This document shows, piece by piece, positions 3,510 to 54,015 of a stretch of 64,000 nt of DNA; position 1 is the stretch's first letter; each line of letters starts with the position of its first letter. The stretch spans positions 62,001-126,000 of IMG/VR virus record IMGVR_UViG_3300028394_002328. The stretch is one strand, 5' to 3'. The notes below the pieces were generated by a model. The model saw only the letters and a list, made by a program, of their open reading frames with translations. It did no database searches and had not been told where the DNA came from. The position numbers were made by a program, and so were the translations under genes.

Positions 3510-4661
3510 ATGAATAATTTTATAGTTTATAACCCATCAACTTTGGATGGGACAGTATACAATATATTTTTTAATATTTTTGGTAGATATACAGATATCG
3601 TAGAAGATGTTAAACTGTTTAGTGGTATTTCAGTCTTAACATTAAGAGAAGATTTATTGTTAACAAAAAATCCACTAATGTTTAATTATTATGAAATTTA
3701 CATGTACAGAAAATCTAAAGGGTTACCTACAAAAATTATCATTGATTGGTCATTAGAGGGTCAATGTCATAATTCAAGTTTATCAACTTTATTCAAGGAA
3801 AACGAACTTAATATTGATAAAGATATATTATTTGTACATAATGATTCTTCTAATAGAATTTGGGTTCCGTTTAATATTGGACAACAGTTAACTATTGATT
3901 ACCATGCATTAGATGCATATAAAAGGTGTATTATTACCTCTAGCAATTTGACCGATACTACTTTAATTAAAGATAGAAAAAATGGATTAAATTTATTAAT
4001 AGGTAAACTTAAAACAAAACACGCTAGATTTTTAGCGGCGTATTATTTTTACAAACATGATCTACTTGATAATACTATTTTAGGTTTACATGTACTACCA
4101 GAAGATATTTTAGCAAGAATGAAACAATATCCTAAGTACGATGATATAGATTTTTATAACAAAATTATACCATTAATAGGACCAGCGGATTCAGTTTCTA
4201 AAATACACGATACGGATGAAGGTTGTACAGCAGAAGATGGCGGGTGGCCATTTGATCCAAACATATTTAAAAATTCTAGTATAAGCTATGTTTGTGAAAC
4301 CTATGATATTGACAAAGGAATTTTTCCATACTTAGTGACAGAAAAATTTTATAGGTCTATTATTAATAAACATCCGTTTGTAGTGCAAGCCGGTTCAGGT
4401 CAATTAAACACTGTTAAATCTTTGGGGTTTGAAACCTTTTCATCTATCATTGATGAAAGTTATAATTATTATGATGTTCTTGATTATTCACATGTTGAAA
4501 AAACTGTATTAGCCGCAAAGGATTTTTTATCAAAACTACCTAATAATGCTGATAAAATACAAGAAATTGTAGACTATAATTATAATCGTTGGCTATCAAG
4601 AAGTAAGGATGAATATGATAAGACTACTGATTTTTTTATCAGATTTATAAATAATCAGTAA
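3510..4661 (+). CDS. Hypothetical protein with glycosyltransferase-like (GT-B/GT10-like) C-terminal half
   Basis: Motif TEKFYRSIINKHPFVV...LGFETFSSIIDESY resembles the C-terminal lobe of fucosyltransferase-like proteins; judged by eye only. Confidence 0.4.
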   Translation: MNNFIVYNPSTLDGTVYNIFFNIFGRYTDIVEDVKLFSGISVLTLREDLLLTKNPLMFNYYEIYMYRKSKGLPTKIIIDWSLEGQCHNSSLSTLFKENELNIDKDILFVHNDSSNRIWVPFNIGQQLTIDYHALDAYKRCIITSSNLTDTTLIKDRKNGLNLLIGKLKTKHARFLAAYYFYKHDLLDNTILGLHVLPEDILARMKQYPKYDDIDFYNKIIPLIGPADSVSKIHDTDEGCTAEDGGWPFDPNIFKNSSISYVCETYDIDKGIFPYLVTEKFYRSIINKHPFVVQAGSGQLNTVKSLGFETFSSIIDESYNYYDVLDYSHVEKTVLAAKDFLSKLPNNADKIQEIVDYNYNRWLSRSKDEYDKTTDFFIRFINNQ

Positions 4662-4681
4662 ATAAAAGTATTGTTGTAAAA

Positions 4682-4980
4682 GCCGTGAGGAAAGAAGCAA
4701 GTCAAAAGACGGGCAAGACGGGGGTGCGAATCCCCCCACCTCCACCAAAAGCATACTAGAGTGACGCTGGGGAAGAGTAATAGGCAGCGGTTAATAAATC
4801 TTCCAAGTATGCTTCTGATGGGGGTGACTAGAATCGATTGACGGATGAGTAGATGAGTGGACAACACGAGAGGCGATGGACGTAATCCAAGCAAAATCTA
4901 TAAATGCCAACGATGAGGTATTTTCTTTAGCCGCATGAGGCTGAGACGGAGTAGGACAGACTCTGTAAAATAACCAACCT
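4682..4980 (+). ncRNA. ssrA: Circularly permuted (two-piece) tmRNA gene
   Basis: The acceptor piece ends GGGGG-TGCGAAT-CCCCC (T-arm, 4720-4736) CACCTCC-A-CCA (4737-4747). After a 72-nt intervening segment, GGGGGTG at 4820-4826 pairs with CACCTCC, giving G3:U70. The tag ORF at 4906-4938 reads ANDEVFSLAA-stop, and a terminator follows. The outer ends are approximate. Confidence 0.93.
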
Positions 4981-4981
4981 G

Positions 4982-5009
4982 TAATAGGCCCGCAAGGGCC
5001 TATTATTTT
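4982..5009 (+). terminator. Rho-independent terminator after tmRNA
   Basis: TAATAGGCCC-GCAA-GGGCCTATTA 10-bp stem followed by TTTT. Confidence 0.85.
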
Positions 5010-38394: not shown

Positions 38395-39084
38395 ATGAAT
38401 GAATTAATAGATGGAAGTGGCTATGTATTAACTAAGAATTTTATTCCTGAACAATTAATTGACAATGTGGTTAATCGTTTAGATGAAATTTCACCAGTCC
38501 GTGCATCTAGTTCCACAATGGAATATGCTGAAAAAGAAGATATAAAAAACTTACCTGATATAGCGGTATGGTGGTCACAAACTGTTATTAATTGGCTAGA
38601 AGTTTTAGAAATAGAAAAATTATTAAATCCATTAATTAAAAATTACTTACCTAATGCTGAATTTTATTCTAGTGATATTGTAGTAATTGAAAAAGAAAGT
38701 ACTTGGCTAAACCCACATGTGGACACTCCCCACAGATTTAAAAAATATAATTACGATAAAAGACTATTAGGTATACAGTGTATTATTTCACTAAGTGATA
38801 TCAATAAAGATTCTGCTAGCACTGGATTAGTCCCTCAAAGTCAACTAAAGGATTATAATATTAATTTGTGCTACGAGGGTTTATATAATGATTTCTTCTT
38901 AGAACATTGTATTCAACCTGATATGCCCAAAGGATCTATTCTATTTTATAATTGTAGGGTACTACATAGTAGTATGCCTAATCCATTGCCCAAATCAAGA
39001 CCGGCACTATTGCTTCATTACCTAAATGGTGATATAGTTGAAGATGTAAAAGATATTGACAATATTTGGAAAAGCAATAAATGA
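38395..39084 (+). CDS. Fe(II)/2-oxoglutarate dioxygenase (PhyH-like)
   Basis: PHVD (HxD), KGSILFYNCRVLHSS (distal His), SRPALL (Arg). Confidence 0.8.
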   Translation: MNELIDGSGYVLTKNFIPEQLIDNVVNRLDEISPVRASSSTMEYAEKEDIKNLPDIAVWWSQTVINWLEVLEIEKLLNPLIKNYLPNAEFYSSDIVVIEKESTWLNPHVDTPHRFKKYNYDKRLLGIQCIISLSDINKDSASTGLVPQSQLKDYNINLCYEGLYNDFFLEHCIQPDMPKGSILFYNCRVLHSSMPNPLPKSRPALLLHYLNGDIVEDVKDIDNIWKSNK

Positions 39085-40938: not shown

Positions 40939-41910
40939 ATGTTTGAAATATTAACTATAGTTCCGGGTAAGAAAAAACTAACACAAAGTGGTTGGCATGG
41001 ATTCAATGCTGTGTGTTGTCATCACCGTGGGCATAAAGCAGATAAAAGAGGTCGTGCTGGTCTACGAATCGATGGCCCAAACTGGAGTGTCCATTGTTTT
41101 AATTGTGGTTTTAAGTGTGGATTCACTCTGGGTAAAAGTATTACCCAAAATGCAAAACATTTCTTACAATGGTGTGGTATAGATGAATCTCAGATACAGC
41201 GTTGGAGCTTAGAAAGTCTACAGAAAAAAGATATATTAGATTTAATACAGGTTAAAAAATCTAAGAAAAAAATTAAATTTAAAGAAGAAACTTTACCTGA
41301 GGGCGAATTACTTGATGTAAATAATCCATTACATAAAGTATATGTTGATTATATACAATCTAGGGGGATAAATCTTAATGACTATCCGTTTATGATCACT
41401 CCAAATGACAAGGGGCGTCAAGGCAATAGAATAATTATCCCTTATACCTACCAAAACAAAATAGTAGGTTACACTAGTCGTTTCTTAGACAACAAAACAC
41501 CTAAGTATATCAATCAACAACAATCGGGTTATGTATTTGGTATTGATTTTCAAAAGCCTGATTATGAAGTTTGTATATTGGTAGAAGGTATTTTTGACGC
41601 ACTAAGTCTTAATTGTTGTGCGTTGACACATAACACAATCAATGATGATCAGGTAGAACTATTAAGCCAATTAAATAGACGAATTATTTTTGTGCCGGAT
41701 CGTGATAAAACTGGATTAGAAACTTGTAGCAGAGCATTAGAGTTAGGATATAGTGTTAGTATTCCGAATTGGGAATCTGATGTAAAAGATGTTAATGATG
41801 CTGTAGTAAGATATGGTAAGTTACCTACATTGTTAAGTATTTTACAGTGGGCAACTACAAGTAAAGTCAAAATAGAAATTCAAAGGAGAAAACTTGAGCA
41901 ACGAATATAA
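40939..41910 (+). CDS. DNA primase (T4 gp61-like)
   Basis: Zn finger CCH...HCFNCG, Toprim VEGIFDAL, PDRD and KDVND. Confidence 0.9.
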   Translation: MFEILTIVPGKKKLTQSGWHGFNAVCCHHRGHKADKRGRAGLRIDGPNWSVHCFNCGFKCGFTLGKSITQNAKHFLQWCGIDESQIQRWSLESLQKKDILDLIQVKKSKKKIKFKEETLPEGELLDVNNPLHKVYVDYIQSRGINLNDYPFMITPNDKGRQGNRIIIPYTYQNKIVGYTSRFLDNKTPKYINQQQSGYVFGIDFQKPDYEVCILVEGIFDALSLNCCALTHNTINDDQVELLSQLNRRIIFVPDRDKTGLETCSRALELGYSVSIPNWESDVKDVNDAVVRYGKLPTLLSILQWATTSKVKIEIQRRKLEQRI

Positions 41911-43297
41911 TAGTGATATGCAGTTATTCTTTTTGCGTATGATGGTCACAAACGCAGAATTATATACAAGGGTCATGAACATCATGAACTCACAAAACTT
42001 TGACCGTAAATTAAAACCAGTAGCAGACTTTTTAGTAGAACATAGTAAAAAATATAATATAATGCCGGATCCTGCTCAAATCAAAGCAGTGACAGGTATA
42101 GATGTAGAGATTCTTAATGAATTAGATGATGGTCATTATAATTGGTTTTTAGATGAATTTGAAAAATTCACAAGACGCCAAGAATTAGAAAGAGCAATTT
42201 TAAAATCAGCCGATTTATTAGAAAAGGGTGATTATGATCCTGTTGAAAAATTAATTAAAGATGCTGTACAAATTAGTTTACAAAAAGACATGGGTACAGA
42301 TTATTTTGCTGATCCTAGGGCTAGGCTTTCTCAACTTAAAAGTAATAACGGACAAAATAGTACAGGATGGCCCTGTATGGATCAGAAACTTTATGGTGGA
42401 TTCAATCGGGGAGAATTGCAAATTTTTGCAGGAGGATCAGGCTCAGGTAAAAGTTTGTTTATGCAAAACTTGTCAGTAAATTGGGTACAAGCAGGATTAA
42501 ATGGTATTTATGTTACACTAGAACTTAGTGAAGGGCTGTGTAGTATGCGTATTGATAGTATGATGACTGATACTAGCAGCCGTGATATCTTTAAAGATAT
42601 TGATAATGTTGAAATGAAAATCAAAATGCTTGCTAAAAAAGCAGGAAAGTTTCAAATTAAATATATGCCAGCACAAAGTACAGTAAATGATTTGCGGGCG
42701 TTTTGTAAAGAATTTCAAATAAAAACAGGTACAAAATTAGATTTCTTGTGTGTAGATTATTTGGATTTGCTTATGCCTGTTAGTGCAAAGGTCAGTCCTT
42801 CAGATTTGTTTGTTAAGGATAAGTATGTCTCTGAAGAATTGCGTAACTTAGCAAAAGAATTAAATGTATTGTTCGTAACAGCAAGTCAGTTGAATCGTAG
42901 TGCAGTTGAAGAAATTGAGTTTGATCATAGTCATATCAGCGGTGGTATTAGTAAAATTAATACAGCAGATAATGTGTTTGGTATCTTTACAAGCCGTAGT
43001 ATGCGTGAACGTGGACAGTATCAATTGCAATTAATGAAAACTAGAAGTAGTAGTGGTGTGGGTCAAAAGATTGAATTAGAGTTTAACATTGAAACTTTGC
43101 GAATTACTGATCCTGATCCTGAGGCTAGTACATATAGACCACCTGCTCCTAGTCCTAATGACATTATTAATAAAATTAAAACTCAATCTACTGTAAATGA
43201 CATGGTACATGCTACTATTGAGCCTGAAAGTAAAAGAGTTATTGCAACTACTGCGGAATCTAGACTAAAGGGTATTCTTAACGGGTTAAAGAAATAA
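41894..43297 (+). CDS. DnaB-like replicative helicase (T4 gp41-like)
   Basis: GGSGSGKS, LELSE, CVDYLDL, TASQLNR, MKTR. Confidence 0.93.
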   Translation: MSNEYNSDMQLFFLRMMVTNAELYTRVMNIMNSQNFDRKLKPVADFLVEHSKKYNIMPDPAQIKAVTGIDVEILNELDDGHYNWFLDEFEKFTRRQELERAILKSADLLEKGDYDPVEKLIKDAVQISLQKDMGTDYFADPRARLSQLKSNNGQNSTGWPCMDQKLYGGFNRGELQIFAGGSGSGKSLFMQNLSVNWVQAGLNGIYVTLELSEGLCSMRIDSMMTDTSSRDIFKDIDNVEMKIKMLAKKAGKFQIKYMPAQSTVNDLRAFCKEFQIKTGTKLDFLCVDYLDLLMPVSAKVSPSDLFVKDKYVSEELRNLAKELNVLFVTASQLNRSAVEEIEFDHSHISGGISKINTADNVFGIFTSRSMRERGQYQLQLMKTRSSSGVGQKIELEFNIETLRITDPDPEASTYRPPAPSPNDIINKIKTQSTVNDMVHATIEPESKRVIATTAESRLKGILNGLKK

Positions 43298-43334: not shown

Positions 43335-43583
43335 ATGCAAAAGAAAACCCGTAGCCTTTTAGAAGAATTAGAATCTATTGGTAGTACCCGTGACATGACA
43401 CATGTTATAGAAAATAGAGCCCATAATATTATCACTAGTGCAATTAATTTAATTGAATTAATTAACAAACACTATGATAAAGATACCTCTGAGGTATTAG
43501 AGCGTAAACTTCTAAGTGCGATAAAAGGCAAGGATCAAAATAGATTTGCTAAAAGCATAAGGAAAAACCATGACACGCCGTAG
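43335..43583 (+). CDS. Hypothetical late protein
   Basis: CATAAATA upstream. Confidence 0.6.
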   Translation: MQKKTRSLLEELESIGSTRDMTHVIENRAHNIITSAINLIELINKHYDKDTSEVLERKLLSAIKGKDQNRFAKSIRKNHDTP

Positions 43584-44568
43584 AATTGATGATGAGGTTC
43601 GCAGTTTAGAAGAAGCATTAAGTAATTGGATAGGTGATTACGGTGCGGCTGCTGCAAAGCAGTTGGGAAATAGAATAACCGGCAAACCTGAAGGTGCAAT
43701 GTCCATTCAAGATAAAATGGCTAAAGAAAAGTTTCTTCAAAACTTTTTAGGTCGTGCAAGTGCTACATTGAATTCAGGTATTGCTAGTGGTAGAATAACA
43801 ACGAATGTAACACCGCAGTCTGCTCCACCAGCTGCACAGCCTGCAGAACCTACTTCACCTGCACCTGCACCAGCAGCACCAGCAGCATCTAAACCTTCTA
43901 TTGCCCCTACTACAGCTCCTCCAAGTAGACCTACCATTGGCAATACTCCAATACATGCAATGCAAGTAAAGTCTATGCAGAACAATATAGCTAGGGATAA
44001 ACGGGTGGCTAACATGCCTCCACCAAACAAAAAGACTTTTGCAGCAGACAAAAGGACACCCGCACAGATTGCACAAATGCGCCGAGCAGGGTTTAGTGAA
44101 AGTTCTACTTATGATAAATTAAACGCAATTTTTGAAAGCATTATGGGTGAGGCTGATCCAGCAGCACCTGCAGCACCTGCTGCCATGACAGCAGCACCTG
44201 CACCAACTGGAGTAGAAACTATATCTCAATTTTTGACTAAATGGGTCAAACAATATATGACTGGCACTAGCCTTGGTGATGCCAATTCTGTGAATCATAT
44301 TAAAAGTTTAATTAAAAATGTAGAAGATACTTATAGTAAAGACAGGGGTAAAGCAGCACTTACAAAATTAGCAAATGATTTGTATGCTGTGTCATATGCA
44401 CAGGATACAGAGCAAAAAGCTGCACCAAGCCAACCTACTCAGCAACCCGCTAGTAGTCCTGCAGCAGCAAAACCAGCAGCACCGGCTAATAATGCTCCAA
44501 GTGATTCATGGGCATCACGAGTAACAGAAAGTAAAAAGAAACCAGTAAAATACTGGGGTCAAAAATGA
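43570..44568 (+). CDS. Pro/Ala-rich probable virion protein
   Basis: PAAPA low-complexity linkers; LEE/FSE/FES potential prohead-protease sites. Confidence 0.55.
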   Translation: MTRRRIDDEVRSLEEALSNWIGDYGAAAAKQLGNRITGKPEGAMSIQDKMAKEKFLQNFLGRASATLNSGIASGRITTNVTPQSAPPAAQPAEPTSPAPAPAAPAASKPSIAPTTAPPSRPTIGNTPIHAMQVKSMQNNIARDKRVANMPPPNKKTFAADKRTPAQIAQMRRAGFSESSTYDKLNAIFESIMGEADPAAPAAPAAMTAAPAPTGVETISQFLTKWVKQYMTGTSLGDANSVNHIKSLIKNVEDTYSKDRGKAALTKLANDLYAVSYAQDTEQKAAPSQPTQQPASSPAAAKPAAPANNAPSDSWASRVTESKKKPVKYWGQK

Positions 44569-45725
44569 ATCTTTCCGAGTCTTTAGCCTCTCTTAGAAAT
44601 AAGTTAGAGACTTTATCTATACCTCCGTTGACAGAAGATAAAGGGCACTTGGACCATCCTGAAGATTTGATATTTTTGGGAGATGTTCAGGGTGCTCAAA
44701 GAGCAGTAGATGCAATCGTAAAAACAGTTTCAAATCCAAAAACTGTTACTATTAAGTGGGATGGGTACCCTGCGCTTATATTTGGCCGTGATTCTAAAGG
44801 TAGATTTAGCATCATGGACAAGCATATGTTTAATAAAAAAGACGGTACAGGCAGACAAGTTTATAGTCCTCAACAATTCAGAGAATATGATTTAGCCCGT
44901 GAAGTAGATCGTTCTGATTTGCATAAACTAATAGCTGAAATATGGCCCGGTTTAGAAAAGGCAAGCGCAGGTACCCAAGGATATTATTGGGGAGATTTAC
45001 TATTCAGCCAACCATTAACAGATAACAATGGTTTGTATAAATTTAAAGCCAATCCTAATGGTATAACATATACCGTGGATGTTGATAGTGAAACTGGTAA
45101 ATTAATGGCAGGCAAAACTGCTGGCATTGCAGTACATCAGTATATAGAACCTGAAGCACCTAACACTGATTCTGCTGTACCACTAGACGGGACAATAGGA
45201 CAACTTAAGAACAACAGCAATGTTGCTATCATTCCTAGTAAGATGCCTGTCACTCCTAACTTAAAGTTGGATCAAAAATTATTAGCAAAAGCCAAACAAG
45301 ATATAGCAAAATATGGTCAAGCAGTTCAACAGTTAATGAATACTGCCCCTCAGGCTAGAAATACATTTAATCAGTTGTTTACAGTTTATGTTAATAAACG
45401 AATCGTTCAAGGAGATTTAAGTAATTTACTAGAAGGATTTATGGAATTTGTTAAATCTAGACCAATGACTGATAAGATGCGGGCTAAGATAGATGAACAT
45501 CTACAAGCCAACGAAGAAGGCTTAATTGGGGCATTTACTATATGGATAGACATATACAATCTTAAGATGAATGTAGTTCAGCAACTAAACAAAGCCGCTG
45601 AAGCCAGTCCTGTAAAAGGATACCTGCAAGATGGTACACAAACCCAAGAAGGATTCGTTTCTAATGGGCTTAAGTTTGTGGATAGAATGGGCTTTAGTAG
45701 ACAGAATTTGGCTGGAAGAGCATAG
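44565..45725 (+). CDS. ATP-dependent ligase-superfamily nucleotidyltransferase (RNA-ligase-like, DUF6267-like)
   Basis: Motif I TIKWDGYPALIFG, WGDLLF, motif IV/V QEGFV...LKFVDR. Confidence 0.65.
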   Translation: MNLSESLASLRNKLETLSIPPLTEDKGHLDHPEDLIFLGDVQGAQRAVDAIVKTVSNPKTVTIKWDGYPALIFGRDSKGRFSIMDKHMFNKKDGTGRQVYSPQQFREYDLAREVDRSDLHKLIAEIWPGLEKASAGTQGYYWGDLLFSQPLTDNNGLYKFKANPNGITYTVDVDSETGKLMAGKTAGIAVHQYIEPEAPNTDSAVPLDGTIGQLKNNSNVAIIPSKMPVTPNLKLDQKLLAKAKQDIAKYGQAVQQLMNTAPQARNTFNQLFTVYVNKRIVQGDLSNLLEGFMEFVKSRPMTDKMRAKIDEHLQANEEGLIGAFTIWIDIYNLKMNVVQQLNKAAEASPVKGYLQDGTQTQEGFVSNGLKFVDRMGFSRQNLAGRA

Positions 45726-47205: not shown

Positions 47206-47250
47206 ATAGCCAATATGATAAATACTATATAAAGTTTGGAACCAAAAACT

Positions 47251-47964
47251 ATGAGATTAAACGACTTAAACAACAAAGTTCATGCTGCCCAAGCATTGAA
47301 AGAAAATTATAAAATGGCATTTAACCTTAATAAAATGTCATTGAATGAAACTAAATCAATGCTAAAGAAGGTACGCTCATTAGCTAATGAGGCTAAACAA
47401 TCACCTGATTTTTACAAAGATCAGTCTAATCCATCTTATATGAAATTAGTATTTATGGAACAGGCATTGGTTACTCATCATAACCAATTAGCATCAAGAC
47501 CTGCTACAAGAATTGTAGTAGAGAATGAGAAAATAGAAGAATCACAAGTTTACTTAGCCGCACAGGATTTAGTAGACACTGTTCAGAAAATGCTAGAAGA
47601 AGTGGGGCAAATGCAAGTTAAGGAATTACCTGCATTAGTTTCTAGTATTGAAAGCGAGATTGGTGTTAATGAAAGTCAATCATTCAATGACCAAGTATCT
47701 CAGCAGCTAGATGCGCTAAGTGCTACTTTAAAAGAGTCAATGGCAGGATTAAAATCCGCAGTTAATGGTTTAACTGGTCAAGAAGCTGGAATGGCTTTTA
47801 ATGAACCACCAGTTGATGATGCACAAATGGGAGCAGATATTGGTGCTGATGTAGGCGCAGAAATGGGTGCAGATATCGGCGCTGATTTAGGTGCTGAAGC
47901 GGGAGAAGAAATTGAACCTCCTGAGCCACAACCTGTCGGTGGAGTTGGACGAGCAAAGAGGTAA
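47251..47964 (+). CDS. Probable prohead core/scaffold-like protein
   Basis: Late motif upstream; coiled-coil, acidic; GADIGAD/GAEMGAD repeats at C-terminus. Confidence 0.45.
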   Translation: MRLNDLNNKVHAAQALKENYKMAFNLNKMSLNETKSMLKKVRSLANEAKQSPDFYKDQSNPSYMKLVFMEQALVTHHNQLASRPATRIVVENEKIEESQVYLAAQDLVDTVQKMLEEVGQMQVKELPALVSSIESEIGVNESQSFNDQVSQQLDALSATLKESMAGLKSAVNGLTGQEAGMAFNEPPVDDAQMGADIGADVGAEMGADIGADLGAEAGEEIEPPEPQPVGGVGRAKR

Positions 47965-47966
47965 GT

Positions 47967-48302
47967 ATGCGCCTCTTTGAATTAGATGGTATTGACCCGT
48001 TAGTAGTAAAATTAATTGCAGTTTCGGATCAGTTACATACCGATTTATTAAATGGTAAAACTGATCCTGAAATGACTACGGATGAACTATTGCAATATCT
48101 TCAGAAATATGATATAGTATTAGATAAAACTGATCTATACAAAATGATTAAAAAACCACCACTCAATAAGATAATTAGCAACATCCAATCAGATAAAATA
48201 GTATTTAAGGATATGGGTACTCCCGAAGCACCTGATCAAGAACAAAATAACCAAATTGTTAAACAAATGGCAAACCAAGCTGCCGCTAATATGCAAACAT
48301 GA
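47967..48302 (+). CDS. Hypothetical late protein
   Basis: Starts MRLFELD. Confidence 0.6.
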   Translation: MRLFELDGIDPLVVKLIAVSDQLHTDLLNGKTDPEMTTDELLQYLQKYDIVLDKTDLYKMIKKPPLNKIISNIQSDKIVFKDMGTPEAPDQEQNNQIVKQMANQAAANMQT

Positions 48303-48619
48303 TAAGTGCTACTCCGTTTGCAGCCGATAAAATAAAATATTTTTTAGAAAAAAGAGGAAAAGGTCTAGGAATTAAAGTAGGCGTGAAAACTACTGGATGT
48401 AGTGGTCTAGCTTACACACTAGAATTCATAGACCAACCTGATTCTACCTATGCTGTATATGAATCTCAAGGTGTAATGATTTGGGTAAGCCCTAAAGATA
48501 TAGTTTATTTAAAAGGGTTAACCGTAGATTATGCCAAACAAGGACTAAATGAAGGTTTTGAATTTATTAACCCTCAGGAAAAAGATCGTTGCGGATGCGG
48601 CGAAAGTTTTAGAATATGA
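48299..48619 (+). CDS. iscA: A-type Fe-S cluster carrier (IscA/HesB family)
   Basis: GVKTTGCSGLAY and CGCGESF. Confidence 0.93.
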   Translation: MISATPFAADKIKYFLEKRGKGLGIKVGVKTTGCSGLAYTLEFIDQPDSTYAVYESQGVMIWVSPKDIVYLKGLTVDYAKQGLNEGFEFINPQEKDRCGCGESFRI

Positions 48620-49299
48620 TAGTAGAAAAATTTAAATATAAAGCCCTTGAAAGAGCCACAGTTGATGGTAGTAGAAAATATGCAACACCTGATGGAGAAA
48701 AACTCCCTAGTGTTACTACTATATTAGATGCAACAAAATCAGAAGAAAGTAAACAAGCACTAGCTAATTGGCGTAGGCGTGTAGGACATGCCAAAGCCCA
48801 AGAGATTACTACTGAAGCGGCTGGTCGTGGTACAAGGATGCACAAATGGCTTGAAGACTATATCAAAACAGGTGTAATAGGTGAACCTGGTAGTAATCCA
48901 TACAGCATTCAAAGTCATCTGATGGCTAGGTCAATCATTGATCAGGGACTAAGCAAGTGTAATGAATTTTGGGGAACAGAAGTATCATTGTATTTTCCTA
49001 AAATTTATGCTGGTACAACAGACTTGGTAGGGTTGCATGAAGGTAGTGAATCTATTATGGATCACAAACAAACCAACAAGCCTAAAAAGCGTGAATGGAT
49101 TGAAGATTATTTTGTTCAGTTAGCAGCATATGCTAATGCTCATAATGAAGTATATGGCACAAAAATACGCAAAGGCGTTATTTTTATGTGTTCAGCGGCC
49201 AATGAATATCAAGAATTTATTCTTGAAGGTGCTGATTTTGATACCTATACAGACAAGTGGTTTAATAGGGTAGAACAGTACTACATGCAATTCATCTGA
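48616..49299 (+). CDS. PD-(D/E)XK exonuclease
   Basis: LPSVTTIL, GTRMHKWLE, YAGTTDL, MDHKQT, QLAAYA. Confidence 0.85.
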   Translation: MIVEKFKYKALERATVDGSRKYATPDGEKLPSVTTILDATKSEESKQALANWRRRVGHAKAQEITTEAAGRGTRMHKWLEDYIKTGVIGEPGSNPYSIQSHLMARSIIDQGLSKCNEFWGTEVSLYFPKIYAGTTDLVGLHEGSESIMDHKQTNKPKKREWIEDYFVQLAAYANAHNEVYGTKIRKGVIFMCSAANEYQEFILEGADFDTYTDKWFNRVEQYYMQFI

Positions 49300-49338: not shown

Positions 49339-51933
49339 ATGGCTATAATACAGATCAGCAAGATACAACAACGATCGGGTAATATCGTTGATTTACCTCA
49401 GTTGGATGAAGCAGAATTTGGTTGGGCAACAGATTCTAAACAGCTTTATATAGGTAAATCTGACCCCAATGAAAACATTGAAGTATTAACTTCTTACTCG
49501 GCGATTGATTTTGATCAAATAACTGGCGCTGTTGGCAATTTAGACATTGATGGTGCTAATATTGGCAATGGTCAAATACTTACCTATAATGGGTCTGATT
49601 GGACTAATCGTGGTGGTACTGTAGGTGGACTAATCACTTTGGGTAATGTTAGCAATGTTAAAATTGACGGTGGTTCTATTGGTTATGTATTAGAAACTGA
49701 TGGAACAGGTAATTTAAGTTGGACTCCTAAATCTACTATTAGTGCAAATATTAGTAATATTACTAAAGCTAATCCTGCTGTAGTTACTACAGCGGCTGAT
49801 AACTTTTTCACTGAAGGCGCATTAGTTACTATTACAGGTGTAGTGGGAATGACTCAGGTTAATGGTAATAGTTACTATGCCAATGTCATTACTGCTAATA
49901 CTTTTTCATTATATTCAGATCCCTCATTAACTACTCCTGTCAATTCTTCAGGGTACTCAACATATACTAGCGGTGGTAGAGCTATTTCGGCTGTAGGTGG
50001 TTCAGGATCTGTGGCAGCAGGTGGTTCTAATACAACTATTCAATTTAATAATAATAATTTATTAGATGGTGACGCAGATTTTACTTGGAATTATACTACA
50101 AATTTACTAACAGTTAACGGCAATGCTAATGTAGCAAACCTTAATGCTACTGGAATAGTTACCGCTACTAGATTGTTTTCTAATGTAGCAACAGGTACTA
50201 CTCCTATTGTTGTCACTTCTACTACCCGCGTAGCTAATTTAAATGTAAATTACGCTAACGTAAGTGATTTTGAAGTAGTCACAACTCAAACAACAGGTAC
50301 ATTTTATCCAGTATTTGTAAATGGTAATACTACTGCTAACTATGCATTGGGTTCTAATGCTAATATATCTTTTAACGCCGCAACAGGAAATTTATCAGCA
50401 ACACTTTTAAATTCAAATAGCAATATAACGGCTACAGGTAATATAACTGGTGGTAACATCATTGGTATTATAGCAGCAGGTGCGAACACTATTACTACAA
50501 CAGGTAATGCTAATGTAGGTAACTTAGGCTTTGGCACTGGAGTAATAACTGGCACAGGTAACATAACTGGCGGTAACATCATTGGTATTATAGCAGCAGG
50601 TGCCAATACAATCAGTACTACTGGTAATGCTAACGTTGGTAACTTAGGATTTGGTAGTGGGGTTATAGTTGGTACAGGTAATATAACTGGTGGTAACATC
50701 ATTGGTATTATAGCAGCAGGTGCGAACACTATTACTACAACAGGTAATGCTAATGTAGGTAACTTAGGCTTTGGTACTGGAGTAATTGTAGGGACTGGCA
50801 ATATCACCGGTGGTAACTTTATAGGAACGCTTGCAAATGGTAATAGCAATGTTAATATTCCTGCAGCCAATGGAAATATTACACTAAGTGTTGCAGGCAA
50901 TGCAAATATTATTGTAGCTACTGGCACTGGAGTAAACGTAGCAGGATATCTGACAGTAACAGGAAATGTAGGTGCTAACAATGTAAATGCTACTAATAGT
51001 GTAGTAGCCAGCACTTTAACTTCTAATGTAGCAATAGGCACTGCACCTTTAACAGTAACTAGTACTACCCGTGTTACTAATTTAAATGTAGCATACTCTA
51101 ATGTTAGCGATTACGGTGTAGTAACCGCACAAAGTTCAGGAGTGTATTATGTTTCGTTTGTAAATGGTAGTACTACTGCAAATCGTGCATTAGGTGCAAA
51201 TGCAAATTTGTCATTTGATGCAGGTACAGGTCAACTATCAGCAACTTTATTAACAGGTACATTAACAACCGCATCACAGGGAAATATTACCACTGTAGGT
51301 ACATTAGGTAGTCTTTCGGTGACTGCTAATGTGTCAACTGGTGGTATAAAGACTGATAATTATTATTATGCTAATGGTGCAGCAATTAGTTTTGCAGGAA
51401 CATATGGTGATAGTAATGTTGCTTCATATTTGCCAACTTACACAGGTCAAGTGGGAACAGGAGTGGCAACATTTTATGGGGCGAATCTCACTACAGGGGC
51501 TAATTCTAATGTAGGAACAATTACAGGCAATTGGTCTTTGAGTGCAGGATCAAGATTAAATGCTACATACGCTGACTTAGCAGAATACTATGAAGCAGAT
51601 TATGATTATGAACCAGGTACTGTATTAGAGTTTGGTGGGGATAAAGAAGTCACATTAGCTACTGATGAAACAATGAAAGTAGCAGGTGTAGTGTCATCTA
51701 ATCCTGCATATGTAATGAACGCTACATGTCAAGGTATAGCAGTTCCTATAGCACTACAAGGTAGAGTTCCTTGTAAAGTACGAGGTGTAATTCGTAAAGG
51801 CGATATGATGATTAGCGGTGGAAATGGTTATGCACGACCTACACATAGTCCTACTATAGGTACAGTAATTGGTAAGGCATTAGAAAACTTCTCAGGCGAG
51901 GGTATCATTGAAATCGCCATAGGTAGACTATAA
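49339..51933 (+). CDS. Tail fibre/spike-like protein with internal repeats and C-terminal chaperone-like domain
   Basis: N-terminal LPQLDEAEFGWATD..QLYIG; Gly/Asn/Thr-rich beta repeats; C-terminal YADLAEYY...GRVPCKV...GTVIGKALE. Confidence 0.75.
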   Translation: MAIIQISKIQQRSGNIVDLPQLDEAEFGWATDSKQLYIGKSDPNENIEVLTSYSAIDFDQITGAVGNLDIDGANIGNGQILTYNGSDWTNRGGTVGGLITLGNVSNVKIDGGSIGYVLETDGTGNLSWTPKSTISANISNITKANPAVVTTAADNFFTEGALVTITGVVGMTQVNGNSYYANVITANTFSLYSDPSLTTPVNSSGYSTYTSGGRAISAVGGSGSVAAGGSNTTIQFNNNNLLDGDADFTWNYTTNLLTVNGNANVANLNATGIVTATRLFSNVATGTTPIVVTSTTRVANLNVNYANVSDFEVVTTQTTGTFYPVFVNGNTTANYALGSNANISFNAATGNLSATLLNSNSNITATGNITGGNIIGIIAAGANTITTTGNANVGNLGFGTGVITGTGNITGGNIIGIIAAGANTISTTGNANVGNLGFGSGVIVGTGNITGGNIIGIIAAGANTITTTGNANVGNLGFGTGVIVGTGNITGGNFIGTLANGNSNVNIPAANGNITLSVAGNANIIVATGTGVNVAGYLTVTGNVGANNVNATNSVVASTLTSNVAIGTAPLTVTSTTRVTNLNVAYSNVSDYGVVTAQSSGVYYVSFVNGSTTANRALGANANLSFDAGTGQLSATLLTGTLTTASQGNITTVGTLGSLSVTANVSTGGIKTDNYYYANGAAISFAGTYGDSNVASYLPTYTGQVGTGVATFYGANLTTGANSNVGTITGNWSLSAGSRLNATYADLAEYYEADYDYEPGTVLEFGGDKEVTLATDETMKVAGVVSSNPAYVMNATCQGIAVPIALQGRVPCKVRGVIRKGDMMISGGNGYARPTHSPTIGTVIGKALENFSGEGIIEIAIGRL
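50433..50820 (+). repeat. 120-bp tandem repeat, three copies plus a partial (40-aa unit)
   Basis: Unit TGNITGGNIIGIIAAGANTITTTGNANVGNLGFGTGVIxG; 50433-50534 is identical to 50673-50774. Confidence 0.95.
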
Positions 51934-52518: not shown

Positions 52519-52623
52519 AACTACGCAAAAAAGATAAATATATTCATATACTCTCATGGTGAGAGTTTATGCGGTCCCCGCCGCGTAGTGGCTAGAACCC
52601 ACACATAATAAGGAGAAAAACAA

Positions 52624-54015
52624 ATGGGACGCCCTTTAAAGATTGCCAAAGCGGTAATGTTAACATTGACCGCAACAAATGGTACAACTGAAGTTGTTAC
52701 AGTAAGTGAAAATTTAAATACTCTAAATGTTATCGCAGGAATGCCTTTTGTAGTTGCTACTACAACAGGAGGACTAACAGCAGGTACAACATATTGGATT
52801 TTAGAAGTACTAACAGCTAATACTTTTACAGTATCAGCTACAGAAACAAGTGCTAATCCTAGTTATACTAAGGTTAACCTATCAAATGCTGGTCCAGTAA
52901 CAGTGAAGGTATCGGTTGGTGTAGTAGACACAGGTTTTCAAAATCCTGATTCTACAGCACAATCAGGTGGTACATCTACTAACCCTGGCGCAAGTTATGG
53001 TGTAGTTGGTGGTAACACAACAATTTATGGCTCACAAGTATTAACACGAGTTGCTATTGGTATTCAAGGAACAGGTACAATTTATGCATCTACTGGTAGT
53101 GCATTAGTATTTGGTGATGCTAATACTAATTTTGATACTGACTTTGTAGCAGGTACTGCTATTCAAGTAGGTACTGCTAACATTAATGGTACATCTACTA
53201 ATTATGCTGATGTAGGATTTGTCTCTTCTACGGGCAACACTGATGTAACAGTGGCTAATACTGTCGTATCAGGTAGCTTTATTGGTGTGTCAGCTGGTGA
53301 TGCTACTAATTTATCTGCAAACAATCCAATACAATTTGTTGCTAATATAGGTACTCTAGTAGCAGGCACAACATATTTTGTTAAGACTATTGCTAATTCG
53401 GCTGCGTTTACTGTTTCAACATCAATTGGTGGCCCTGCATTAGCAATGACAGCAAATACTTCTGCAACTACTGGAAGACAGCAAGTTGCATATTTAGCTG
53501 GTCCGGCATCACTTGTAAATGCAGTTGGCAATACGTATGTTTATGCAAATGATGAAGCAGGATATATTGTTCGTCAAAAAGGTAAGCAAAAATATCTAGT
53601 AACAGGTTTAACATCTGGTTTAACTGCACAATGTACAACAGCTAATGTTGCAAATGCAGCATTAACACCAAATACAATGAGTATTACTGCAACAACAGCA
53701 GCACCTGCAACAGTGTATGTACAGTCAGTAAACAATTATCAAACAGAATTGTTTGAAGTTACAGTTGCTCCTAGTGCATTGTCAGTTGGTACAGCTTACA
53801 CCATTACTAGTGTAGGTACTACAAATTGGACAGCAGTTGGTGCTTCTGCTAATATTACTGGTGTATCATTCGTTGCAACTGCAACTGGTTCAGGTACAGG
53901 TACAGCGATATTGACTACAGCGAATCCTGATGTTATTGCTACATTCAACACAGCATACGCTGCTAATACATACGATGGACAACCTAACCCAATCGTTGTA
54001 GTTAATAACGCATAA
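52624..54015 (+). CDS. Probable virion structural protein
   Basis: Late motif, structured leader, AAGGAG RBS; Thr/Ala/Gly-rich. Confidence 0.6.
   Translation: MGRPLKIAKAVMLTLTATNGTTEVVTVSENLNTLNVIAGMPFVVATTTGGLTAGTTYWILEVLTANTFTVSATETSANPSYTKVNLSNAGPVTVKVSVGVVDTGFQNPDSTAQSGGTSTNPGASYGVVGGNTTIYGSQVLTRVAIGIQGTGTIYASTGSALVFGDANTNFDTDFVAGTAIQVGTANINGTSTNYADVGFVSSTGNTDVTVANTVVSGSFIGVSAGDATNLSANNPIQFVANIGTLVAGTTYFVKTIANSAAFTVSTSIGGPALAMTANTSATTGRQQVAYLAGPASLVNAVGNTYVYANDEAGYIVRQKGKQKYLVTGLTSGLTAQCTTANVANAALTPNTMSITATTAAPATVYVQSVNNYQTELFEVTVAPSALSVGTAYTITSVGTTNWTAVGASANITGVSFVATATGSGTGTAILTTANPDVIATFNTAYAANTYDGQPNPIVVVNNA

What the first reader, a model, noticed from the sequence alone, without database searches (positions are those of the whole stretch)
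44565..45725. RNA-ligase-family enzyme embedded among late head genes, possibly packaged and injected
Seen: KWDG (KxDG adenylation motif I), WGDLLF and EGFV...K motifs of the ligase/capping nucleotidyltransferase superfamily. A short N-terminal leader ends in ...PPLTE, and the gene lies between probable virion genes. Established: the T4 prohead protease cleaves after Glu, and T4 Rnl1 repairs tRNA cut by the PrrC anticodon nuclease. Inference: this may be a virion-delivered RNA-repair or RNA/protein-adenylating enzyme. With the tmRNA it would form a two-part translation-rescue kit (tRNA repair plus ribosome rescue).
Basis: partly seen in the sequence, partly recalled or inferred. Interest (0 to 1): 0.62.

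Follow-up and report, generated by a model that had tools for sequence, protein, structure and literature searches.

The report
Hidden ligase-like enzyme family in phages
This gene of a 335-kb freshwater jumbo phage encodes a very divergent relative of RNA/DNA ligases from an uncharacterised family (DUF6267) that is also found in nearly all marine cyanomyophages; it sits beside replication genes rather than head genes, and delivery inside the virion is possible but unproven.

Summary
They fall on the most conserved columns of Pfam DUF6267, a family with no published function.

- **Location.** The gene is not among head genes. It follows primase and DnaB helicase, a synteny shared with cyanophage gp41. 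The portal, protease and capsid genes lie ~218 kb away.
- **Leader.** The 24-residue leader ends in L-T-E in a predicted disordered linker. Such an h-x-E occurs in 129 of 133 family representatives, and the phage encodes a T4-type (S77) prohead protease, so cleavage and capsid targeting are plausible.
- **Against packaging.** Leaderless cyanophage orthologues were not listed in published virion proteomes, although their neighbour, an NMNAT-like "cytidylyltransferase" with a T4-CTS-like N-terminus, was.
- **Partners.** Relatives are fused to that NMNAT-like domain, to a Pol-beta-type nucleotidyltransferase and to ART-PolyVal.
- **tmRNA.** The tmRNA "kit" idea is unsupported.

Verdict: a new family within a known superfamily; its substrate is unknown.

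The parts
44565..45725 (+). DUF6267 gene, 386 aa: a divergent ligase-superfamily nucleotidyltransferase
   Evidence: ORF. Pfam PF19782, E 1.8e-37. AF2 model pLDDT 93.5. Ligase NTase domains dominate the structural matches.
44565..44636 (+). N-terminal leader, residues 1-24: helix 3-16, then a disordered linker ending L-T-E; a candidate propeptide or capsid-targeting segment
   Evidence: pLDDT is below 50 for residues 17-25. E24 is at least 90% conserved. An h-x-E lies upstream of HxED in 129/133 representatives versus 29% of control windows.
44640..44666 (+). Conserved K-G-H-L-D-H-P-E-D segment (residues 26-34) at the start of the domain
   Evidence: H31, E33 and D34 are at least 90% conserved. 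Role unknown.
44754..44765 (+). Motif I, K64-W-D-G; K64 is the predicted nucleotidyl-accepting lysine
   Evidence: K64, D66 and G67 are at least 90% conserved. The motif follows strand 62-64 and precedes strand 70-75 in the model.
44979..45005 (+). Motif III-like strand G-Y-Y-W-G-D-L-L-F (residues 139-147) with invariant D144
45033..45080 (+). Motif IIIa-like strands (residues 157-172) with conserved F160, P164 and Y169
45273..45599 (+). Helical insertion (residues 237-345, five helices) between motifs IIIa and IV; contains invariant K334
45642..45692 (+). Motif IV (E362-G-F-V) and motif V-like K370...R374 on a tight beta-hairpin
   Evidence: E362, G363, K370 and R374 are invariant. Strands 363-366 and 369-371.
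43570..44568 (+). Upstream P/A-rich 332-aa ORF whose stop overlaps the DUF6267 start (ATGA); probably co-transcribed and translationally coupled
   Evidence: The same arrangement occurs in clade relatives. Homology is detected only within the clade.
40939..43297 (+). Primase and DnaB-like helicase genes immediately upstream; this is the conserved context
   Evidence: Pfam and PHROG matches. The same gp41-to-DUF6267 order is seen in S-PM2, S-SZBM1 and P-SSM4.

Best explanation
The gene encodes a deeply divergent member of the covalent nucleotidyltransferase (ATP-dependent RNA/DNA ligase) superfamily, currently filed only as Pfam DUF6267.

**Architecture.** The catalytic core is residues ~26-236 plus 346-386. 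It carries the ligase motifs in the canonical order:
- motif I: K64-x-D-G
- motif III: G143-D144
- motif IIIa: F160 / Y169
- motif IV: E362-G363
- motif V: K370, plus R374

A ~110-residue helical insert with an invariant K334 interrupts the core. There is no OB or other C-terminal domain.

**Inferred mechanism (not shown).** K64 attacks ATP (or possibly NAD+) to form enzyme-AMP. The AMP is then passed to a 5'-phosphate end, which is sealed to a 3'-OH. RNA is the somewhat likelier substrate, because nick-sealing and tRNA-type RNA ligases are the best structural matches.

**Partners.** The enzyme is functionally tied to an NMNAT/NadD-like HIGH-motif nucleotidyltransferase. The two are fused in the closest multidomain relatives and in S-PM2, adjacent in cyanophages, and separate in this genome (G000:189878-190564). 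In other phages the family is also joined to a Pol-beta-type nucleotidyltransferase.

**Genomic setting.** The gene sits with the replication genes, not the head genes.

**Leader.** The 24-residue leader ending L-T-E is most simply a propeptide or linker recognised by the phage's T4-type prohead protease. That would place the protein in the capsid, but this step is a hypothesis.

**My odds.**
- ligase-superfamily fold: 0.85
- active through K64: 0.7
- RNA ends as substrate: 0.4
- DNA ends as substrate: 0.25
- packaged in virions: 0.4
For: **Motifs and fold**
- The motifs lie on invariant or at least 90%-conserved columns of a 59-sequence alignment.
- The AF2 model has pLDDT 93.5 and pTM 0.88.
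- The aligned ranges place K370 and E362 near NgrRnl K326 and E312. This is arithmetic on the ranges, so it is an inference.
- Beyond the family itself, BFVD returns phage RNA ligases (Atu_ph07, E 2e-3).
- The only named non-DUF6267 neighbour in the ESM Atlas feature search is a PF09414 RNA_ligase cluster (score 0.75, a lead only).

**Fusions**
- Of 150 representatives, 49 have N-terminal and 32 have C-terminal extensions of at least 100 aa.
- The two recurrent partners are a HIGH-motif NTase and a Pol-beta-type NTase. ART-PolyVal, Sigma70_r4, NT5C and Sod_Cu also occur.
- The genome's own HIGH NTase matches the fused domain of P0125 at E 3.8e-65. Its model best matches NadD/NMNAT (1k4k, E 1.8e-5).

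**Synteny**
- gp41 helicase ... DUF6267 ... cytidylyltransferase in S-PM2, S-SZBM1 and P-SSM4.

**Leader**
-; S77 protease.
- T4 capsid-targeting sequences read from the T4 record resemble many family N-termini.
- They also resemble the N-termini of the virion-detected cyanophage cytidylyltransferase (PMC9146016; PMC3037559 Table S8).
Against: **Homology rests on structure only**
- Pfam scans of all 59 members give nothing except one PF09511 hit at E 0.15.
- PDB sequence and profile searches find nothing.
- hhalign against T4 Rnl1, Rnl2 and gp30 finds nothing.
- hhalign against a 34-sequence Rnl2 profile gives probability 0.3%.
- Foldseek on the PDB gave no significant match.

**Departures from canonical ligases**
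- Motif III has Asp where ligases usually have Glu.
- The spacing between motifs IV and V is unusually short.
- There is no OB domain.

**Against RNA repair**
- No T4 Pnkp homologue and no PF09414 ligase in the genome.

**Against packaging**
- The gene lies ~218 kb from the head module.
- No other protein in the genome shares the leader.
- Cyanophage orthologues lack any leader and are absent from the published virion protein lists.
- The h-x-E is usually 5-7 residues before the conserved His, so it could be part of the domain rather than a cleavage site.
Confidence: 0.6

Rival explanations
1. This is a virion-packaged, injected RNA-repair enzyme: cleaved after Glu24 by the prohead protease and ejected with the DNA. 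It mends tRNA cut by host anticodon nucleases and forms a translation-rescue kit with the phage tmRNA.
For: - Ligase fold with RNA ligases as the top matches.
- L-T-E at the end of a disordered leader.
- S77 protease present.
- CTS-like N-termini across the family.
- Relatives fused to ART-PolyVal and Sigma70_r4 in a polyvalent-protein architecture.
- The neighbouring cyanophage cytidylyltransferase is a virion protein.
- The tmRNA is real.
Against: - No Pnkp-type end-healing partner was found.
- The tmRNA is ~40 kb away. It is shared only within the clade and absent from S-PM2 and S-SZBM1, which carry the family.
- The gene is in the replication neighbourhood.
- The orthologues are not listed in cyanophage virion proteomes.
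- The leader is unique in the genome.
Confidence: 0.12
2. A replication-linked nick-sealing DNA ligase, or DNA-end adenylyltransferase, made in the cytoplasm together with primase and helicase. In cyanomyophages it would be the 'missing' DNA ligase.
For: - The position directly after primase/helicase is conserved in this clade and in S-PM2, S-SZBM1 and P-SSM4.
- Those three cyanophages have neither an ATP-dependent (PF01068) nor an NAD-dependent (PF01653) ligase.
- The family is present in 464 phage records, nearly all cyanomyophages.
Against: - This phage and its close relatives already have a canonical ATP-dependent DNA ligase.
- There is no OB domain.
- RNA ligases outrank DNA ligases structurally.
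- Fusions to NMNAT-like, Pol-beta NTase, ART, sigma region 4 and Sod_Cu domains are not what a replicative ligase shows.
Confidence: 0.2
3. An NAD+-linked enzyme rather than a classical ligase. It might use NAD+ as the AMP donor, with the NMNAT-like partner regenerating NAD+. Alternatively it might adenylylate or cap a protein or RNA target as part of host take-over or counter-defence against NAD+-depleting immunity.
For: - The recurrent fusion or adjacency partner is NadD/NMNAT-like.
- There are further fusions to ART-PolyVal, an NAD+-using ADP-ribosyltransferase, and to sigma-70 region 4.
- Some HIGH-NTase relatives are fused to HD/HD_4 domains.
Against: - No NAD+-ligase Ia-type domain was detected.
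- The HIGH-NTase fold match has only moderate TM-scores (0.45-0.5) and also hits PPAT.
- The AI docking test of the two proteins gave no verdict.
- There is no biochemical data.
Confidence: 0.15
4. Not an enzyme of this kind at all. On this view the fold resemblance is a common arrangement, the conserved residues serve a structural or binding role, and the leader is simply part of the domain.
For: - All sequence-profile tests against ligases were negative.
Against: - The invariant residues coincide with the ligase motif order, including a Lys in a K-x-D-G loop and an E-G...K hairpin.
Confidence: 0.07

Closest known systems
Rnl5-type nick-sealing RNA ligases (Naegleria gruberi NgrRnl, PDB 5cot/6vt0)
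   Different: NgrRnl has an N-terminal OB-like domain, whereas this protein has only a 24-residue leader. This protein has a ~110-residue helical insert before motif IV. Sequence identity is 8%, and there is no Pfam PF09414 match.
T4 RNA ligase 1 (Rnl1, gp63) and T4 RNA ligase 2 (Rnl2, gp24.1)
   Different: The Rnl1 tRNA-specific and Rnl2 C-terminal domains are absent. hhalign and Pfam find no similarity. No Pnkp partner is present in the genome.
ATP-dependent DNA ligases (T4 gp30, T7, Chlorella virus, LigIII/IV)
   Different: No OB domain or motif VI. The phage has its own canonical PF01068 ligase elsewhere.
T4 internal proteins and Alt (capsid-targeting sequence cut by gp21 after L/I-x-E)
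   Same: The leader ends in L-T-E in a disordered linker, and the genome encodes an S77 protease. Many family members begin with M-(K/R)-h-x-E-h-h-x-E, like IPIII (MKTYQEFIAE) and Alt (MELITELFDE).
   Different: This protein's leader is 24 residues long, and only loosely resembles a CTS. No virion data exist. The gene is not near the head genes.
Polyvalent proteins of phages (Iyer et al. 2017, PMC5512222)
   Same: Relatives such as P0125 combine HIGH-NTase, DUF6267, ART-PolyVal and Sigma70_r4 domains in one 1089-aa protein.
   Different: The window's protein is a single domain. The paper does not describe this domain: searching it for 'ligase' found only ATP-grasp RNA ligases, in another context.

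Membership tests
Pfam DUF6267 (PF19782) | Full-length match above the gathering score | tested here: met
   130 bits against a cut-off of 27; residues 28-382 cover profile positions 3-372 of 376.
Covalent nucleotidyltransferase superfamily (ATP-dependent ligases / capping enzymes) | Motif I, K-x-D-G, with a conserved lysine nucleophile | tested here: met
   K64, D66 and G67 are at least 90% conserved. The motif lies in a loop between strands 62-64 and 70-75.
Covalent nucleotidyltransferase superfamily (ATP-dependent ligases / capping enzymes) | Motifs III, IIIa, IV and V present in collinear order | tested here: met
   D144, F160/Y169, E362-G363 and K370 are invariant or conserved and occur in that order. 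Deviations: Asp rather than Glu in motif III, 8 residues between motifs IV and V, and a helical insert before motif IV.
Covalent nucleotidyltransferase superfamily (ATP-dependent ligases / capping enzymes) | NTase (adenylyltransferase) fold | tested here: met
   [not shown]
Covalent nucleotidyltransferase superfamily (ATP-dependent ligases / capping enzymes) | Detectable sequence or profile homology to known members | tested here: not met
   hmmscan, phmmer and hhalign were all negative. HHpred against full PDB/Pfam profile libraries was not available.
Covalent nucleotidyltransferase superfamily (ATP-dependent ligases / capping enzymes) | Formation of a covalent enzyme-NMP intermediate | not testable with these tools
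   Needs a labelling assay with a K64 mutant control.
Rnl1 family (T4 gp63) | PF09511 NTase plus a C-terminal tRNA-specificity domain | tested here: not met
   No PF09511 match for this protein. Only 1 of 59 members gives a hit, at E 0.15. No extra C-terminal domain in the model.
Rnl2 / Rnl5 families (PF09414) | PF09414 NTase plus a C-terminal (Rnl2) or N-terminal OB-like (Rnl5) accessory domain | tested here: not met
   No PF09414 match. No accessory domain is present; the helical insert stands in its place.
ATP-dependent DNA ligases (PF01068 + OB) | PF01068 adenylation domain followed by an OB domain with motif VI | tested here: not met
   No PF01068 match to this protein. The protein ends 12 residues after R374. 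A canonical ligase lies elsewhere in the genome.
T4-type capsid-targeted internal proteins | N-terminal propeptide ending (L/I)-x-E, and a gp21-family protease in the phage | tested here: met
   L22-T23-E24 lies in a linker with pLDDT below 50. A Peptidase_S77 gene scores 98 bits.
T4-type capsid-targeted internal proteins | Presence of the processed protein in virions | not testable with these tools
   No proteome exists for this phage. Leaderless cyanophage orthologues are not listed in the S-SZBM1 proteome or in Table S8 for S-SM1, S-PM2 and Syn9.
Polyvalent proteins | Several effector domains in one virion-delivered polypeptide | tested here: not met
   The window's protein has a single domain. 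Only relatives are polyvalent.

The most novel reading that the evidence does not exclude
DUF6267 is a new, very widespread branch of the ligase superfamily that works as a pair with an NMNAT-like enzyme. In many phages the pair, or fusions of it with Pol-beta NTase and ADP-ribosyltransferase domains, would be loaded into the capsid through T4-type targeting peptides and injected as an early nucleic-acid-repair or NAD-linked counter-defence kit. In marine cyanomyophages, which show no canonical DNA ligase, it would be the only ligase-type enzyme the virus carries.
Probability: 0.25. Interest if true: 0.8.

Novelty: new variant of a known kind. Interest (0 to 1): 0.6.

Why it matters
**Reach of the family.** It has 870 clusters at 50% identity. 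It occurs in 464 isolate genomes, including nearly all marine cyanomyophages, plus Methylophilales, Pelagibacter and Vibrio phages. More than 546 IMG/VR loci belong to this freshwater jumbo-phage clade alone. Every record I saw names it 'hypothetical protein'.

**What the assignment gives.** Placing it in the ligase superfamily yields a concrete chemistry to test on a core cyanophage gene (T4-GC71).

**Why that is useful.**
- It may explain how cyanomyophages manage without a recognisable DNA ligase.
- It links the gene to the virion-borne 'cytidylyltransferase', whose role is also unknown.
- If the leader is a true capsid-targeting peptide, phages far from T4 use that system to deliver enzymes.

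Tried and rejected
**Searches for ligase homology that found nothing**
- Foldseek against the PDB gave nothing significant. Only the exhaustive VIA-align search showed the ligase fold.
- phmmer and hmmsearch against PDB sequences found nothing relevant.
- hhalign of the family profile against single T4 Rnl2, Rnl1 and gp30 sequences gave probabilities below 1%.
- hhalign against a 34-sequence Rnl2 profile gave 0.3%. That alignment happens to pair E-G-F-V with the Rnl2 E-G-Y-V, but it is not significant.
- A lenient Pfam scan of all 59 members showed no recurring ligase family.

**Protein-protein test**
- Complex prediction of DUF6267 (residues 25-386) with the genome's NMNAT-like protein scored 0.00. 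That is no verdict, and counts neither for nor against binding.

**Leader and expression**
- An HMM of the clade's leader found no other protein in the genome.
- The T4 late-promoter word TATAAATA is under-represented, and none lies in front of the gene.
- The sigma-70 and terminator scans were uninformative.

**Searches that returned nothing or failed**
- T4 Pnkp against the genome: no match.
- PF09414 in the genome: no match.
- tblastn of the NMNAT-like protein against phage isolates: no match at 1e-5.
- The search for related loci with the wide alignment failed for lack of a conserved stretch. The narrower alignment returned only close relatives, so leader presence could not be tested against protease type across independent lineages.
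- BLAST between the window's neighbours and the cyanophage module found only the shared DUF6267.
- A global alignment of fused relatives to the NMNAT-like protein (A3) was unusable.

**Not used**
- The reads tools were not used.
- No alternative genetic code was needed.
Full report
**1. The observation**

The window holds an ORF at 44565-45725 (+) of 386 aa.
- K-W-D-G at residues 64-67
- W-G-D-L-L-F at residues 142-147
- E-G-F-V at residues 362-365, followed by K370
- a 24-residue N-terminus ending P-P-L-T-E

The protein is a full-length member of Pfam DUF6267 (E 1.8e-37) and of PHROG 455; both are annotated as of unknown function. A full-text literature search for 'DUF6267' found no paper.

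I aligned 59 homologues with mean column identity 28%.
- Invariant columns: G74, D144, Y169, K334, E362, G363, K370, R374.
- Columns at least 90% conserved: E24, H31, E33, D34, K64, D66, G67.

**2. The host genome**

The window is bases 62001-126000 of a 335,035-bp virus record judged 95% complete. The record carries:
- a Betaproteobacteria-type tmRNA and a 'freshwater-2' RNA motif
- a T4 gp21-family prohead protease (Peptidase_S77, 98 bits)
- a canonical ATP-dependent DNA ligase (PF01068)

It has no NAD-dependent ligase, no PF09414 RNA ligase and no T4 Pnkp homologue. More than 546 IMG/VR loci encode relatives at 70% identity or more, on contigs of up to 352 kb. This is an abundant freshwater jumbo-phage clade.

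**3. Fold**

An AlphaFold2 model built from the alignment is confident: pLDDT 93.5, pTM 0.88. Only residues 17-25 fall below 50.

Foldseek against the PDB found nothing significant. The exhaustive VIA-align search gave a different picture.
- RNA ligases lead:

|---|---|
| Naegleria NgrRnl (186 residues, 4.2 A) | 7.6 |
| T4 Rnl1 | 6.7 |
| fungal Trl1 | 6.2 |
| archaeal Rnl3 | 6.0 |
| trypanosome REL1 | 6.0 |
| DNA ligases | at most 5.9 |

- No capping enzyme is listed.

The secondary structure fits the ligase plan.
- Strand-K64xDG-strand forms motif I.
- A strand carries G143-D144 (motif III).
- Further strands carry F160 and Y169 (motif IIIa).
- A tight hairpin carries E362-G363 and K370 (motifs IV and V).

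From the aligned ranges (model 21-384 against NgrRnl 120-339), K370 and E362 fall within a few residues of NgrRnl K326 and E312. The PDB titles name these, along with K170, as the mutated active-site residues. This is arithmetic on ranges, not a superposition.

Two features depart from known ligases. A five-helix insert (residues 237-345, with invariant K334) lies between motifs IIIa and IV. No OB or other accessory domain is present.

Outside the family itself:
- BFVD returns phage RNA ligases next.
- The Atlas feature search returns one PF09414 cluster, at a score that counts only as a lead.

All sequence-profile tests against ligases were negative.

**4. Context**

The gene is not among head genes.
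- Directly upstream are a primase (40939-41910), a DnaB-like helicase (41894-43297), an 82-aa ORF and a P/A-rich 332-aa ORF whose stop overlaps the start codon (ATGA).
- Downstream are small unknown ORFs, an IscA-like protein, a PD-(D/E)XK nuclease and a fibre-like protein.
- The portal, S77 protease and major head protein lie at about 324.5-330.5 kb, some 218 kb away.

The order helicase ... DUF6267 recurs in clade relatives. It also recurs in T4-like cyanophages:
- S-PM2: gp43, uvsX, gp41, mazG, a small ORF, d138.
- S-SZBM1: recA, 2OG oxygenase, gp41, mazG, ORFs 143 and 142, ORF 141.
- P-SSM4: uvsX, 2OG oxygenase, gp41, mazG..., PSSM4_154, which is T4-GC71.

tblastn with the S-SZBM1 protein finds the family in 464 isolate records. 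Nearly all are cyanomyophages. The rest include Methylophilales phage Melnitz, Pelagibacter phages and a 349-kb Vibrio phage.

**5. Partners**

Of 150 representatives at 50% identity, 49 have N-terminal and 32 have C-terminal extensions of at least 100 aa. Two partner domains recur.
- **HIGH-motif nucleotidyltransferase** (Pfam CTP_transf_like). It is present in the closest fused relatives (54-62% identical in the DUF6267 part) and in S-PM2 d138.
- **Pol-beta-type nucleotidyltransferase**, with a G-S...D-L-D-L signature. It is absent from this genome.

Other fusions include ART-PolyVal with sigma-70 region 4, NT5C, DUF5661 and Cu/Zn superoxide dismutase.

This genome encodes the HIGH-motif enzyme separately, at G000:189878-190564. 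It matches the fused domain at E 3.8e-65. Its model (pLDDT 80) best matches NaMN/NMN adenylyltransferases (E. coli NadD, E 1.8e-5), and PPAT after that.

In cyanophages the 'cytidyltransferase' (T4-GC190) is the next gene after DUF6267. Fusion and adjacency together argue for a functional pair. A docking test gave no verdict.

**6. The leader and packaging**

*Evidence for a cleaved leader*
- The model shows a helix at residues 3-16, then a disordered linker ending at E24.
- An h-x-E lies within 25 residues upstream of the conserved H-x-E-D in 129 of 133 representatives, against 29% of control windows.
- This holds both when the domain is N-terminal (79 of 83) and when it follows another domain (50 of 50).
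- The spacing varies from 3 to 15 residues, most often 5-7.
- Among N-terminal-class proteins, 57 of 80 have an h-x-E by residue 12, against 20% of this genome's ORFs.
- Many begin M-(K/R)-h-x-E-h-h-x-E. That resembles the T4 capsid-targeting sequences read from the T4 record: IPII and IPIII (MKTYQEFIAE) and Alt (MELITELFDE).
- In T4 the first ten residues suffice for head targeting, and gp21 removes them (PMC9026906).
- S77 proteases are present in this phage, in two relatives and in three cyanophages.

*Evidence from cyanophage virions*
- The cytidylyltransferase begins M-R-F-R-Q-F-I-I-E in S-SZBM1 and M-K-K-F-S-A-F-L-K-E in P-SSM4.
- It was detected in purified virions of S-SZBM1 (PMC9146016, Table 1) and of S-SM1 (25 peptide counts; PMC3037559, Table S8).

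*Evidence against packaging*
- The cyanophage DUF6267 proteins start directly at the conserved H-L-E-H-(L/P)-E-D segment, with no leader.
- They are not listed in those proteomes.
- This clade's 24-residue leader resembles a T4 CTS only loosely.
- The leader corresponds to a helix (L-A-R-L-R-D-R-I-V-like) that in multidomain relatives lies between domains.
- No other protein in the genome shares it.

I rate packaging of this particular protein at about 0.4.

**7. The tmRNA idea**

The tmRNA is real: 4649-5008, beta_tmRNA 98 bits and the permuted model 111.5 bits. ARAGORN did not call it.
- It lies ~40 kb from the gene.
- Three related jumbo phages also have one, 41-53 kb from their DUF6267 gene.
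- S-PM2 and S-SZBM1 have none.

The co-occurrence is explained by shared ancestry within one clade. No end-healing enzyme was found. The 'two-part kit' is not supported.

**8. What it most likely does**

*Shown*
- The fold class.
- Conserved ligase-type residues.
- Linkage to an NMNAT-like enzyme.
- The replication-gene neighbourhood.
- A conserved h-x-E before the domain.

*Inferred*
- K64 forms a covalent AMP adduct, and the enzyme adenylylates and seals a 5'-phosphate end.
- RNA is somewhat favoured by the structural ranking.
- DNA nick sealing remains a live alternative for the family. S-PM2, S-SZBM1 and P-SSM4 show neither PF01068 nor PF01653, so DUF6267 is the only ligase-type protein seen in them.
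- This phage, however, has its own canonical ligase.
- The NMNAT-like and ADP-ribosyltransferase partners keep an NAD+-linked chemistry open.

**9. Novelty**

The superfamily is known. This family has not been assigned to it in anything I could search. Its architecture (helical insert, no OB domain, NMNAT-like and Pol-beta partners) is new. I file it as a new variant of a known kind.

Noticed in passing
window 4649-5008 (+): A phage-encoded tmRNA. Rfam beta_tmRNA scores 98 bits and the tmRNA_permuted model 111.5 bits, yet ARAGORN reports no tmRNA or tRNA anywhere in the window. Three related jumbo phages also carry one.
   Followed up: partly
window 52550-52626 (+): Rfam 'freshwater-2' cis-regulatory RNA motif (65 bits against a gathering score of 49.9), just upstream of the 463-aa ORF at 52624-54015.
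   Followed up: no
G000:C1:189878-190564 (+) (L007:1379-2065): A stand-alone HIGH-motif (H-x-G-H) nucleotidyltransferase whose model best matches NadD/NMNAT. It is the split counterpart of the domain fused to DUF6267 in relatives. Some of its homologues are fused to HD/HD_4 (SpoT-like hydrolase) domains.
   Followed up: partly
L012:6257-7345 (S-SZBM1_140) and L135:4908-6059 (PSSM4_155): The cyanophage core 'cytidylyltransferase' (T4-GC190), detected in virions by two published proteomes, starts with a sequence very like the T4 capsid-targeting peptide (M-R-F-R-Q-F-I-I-E and M-K-K-F-S-A-F-L-K-E). This suggests it is an internal head protein loaded the T4 way.
   Followed up: partly
S-PM2, S-SZBM1 and P-SSM4 whole records (W01-W03): None of the three cyanomyophages has a PF01068 or PF01653 DNA ligase. 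The DUF6267 gene in their replication cluster is the only ligase-superfamily candidate seen.
   Followed up: partly
window 43570-44568 (+): A Pro/Ala-rich, low-complexity 332-aa protein whose stop overlaps the DUF6267 start (ATGA). It is conserved only within the clade (465 aa in a relative), and its function is unknown.
   Followed up: partly
[not shown]
   Followed up: no
window 49339-51933 (+): An 864-aa repeat-rich, fibre-like protein with a Pfam E1_FCCH domain match (E 1.5e-8), which is unusual for a phage fibre.
   Followed up: no
window 38395-39084, 48299-48619, 48616-49299 (+): Auxiliary genes around the replication cluster: a PhyH-type dioxygenase, an IscA/HesB Fe-S assembly protein and a PD-(D/E)XK nuclease. 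The IscA gene recurs a few genes downstream of DUF6267 in distant relatives (L010, L095).
   Followed up: no
L009:8001-11270 (protein P0125): A 1089-aa polyvalent protein combining an NMNAT-like domain, DUF6267, ART-PolyVal and sigma-70 region 4. This looks like an Alt-like RNA-polymerase-directed effector. A DUF5661 protein is encoded next to it, and ClpB-like and DnaJ genes lie upstream.
   Followed up: no
window 47236-47964 (+): A 242-aa protein with an acidic G-A-D/E repeat tail. It matches PHROG 14154 'virion structural protein' (E 2.8e-11) and is the only decent virion-type match near the finding.
   Followed up: no
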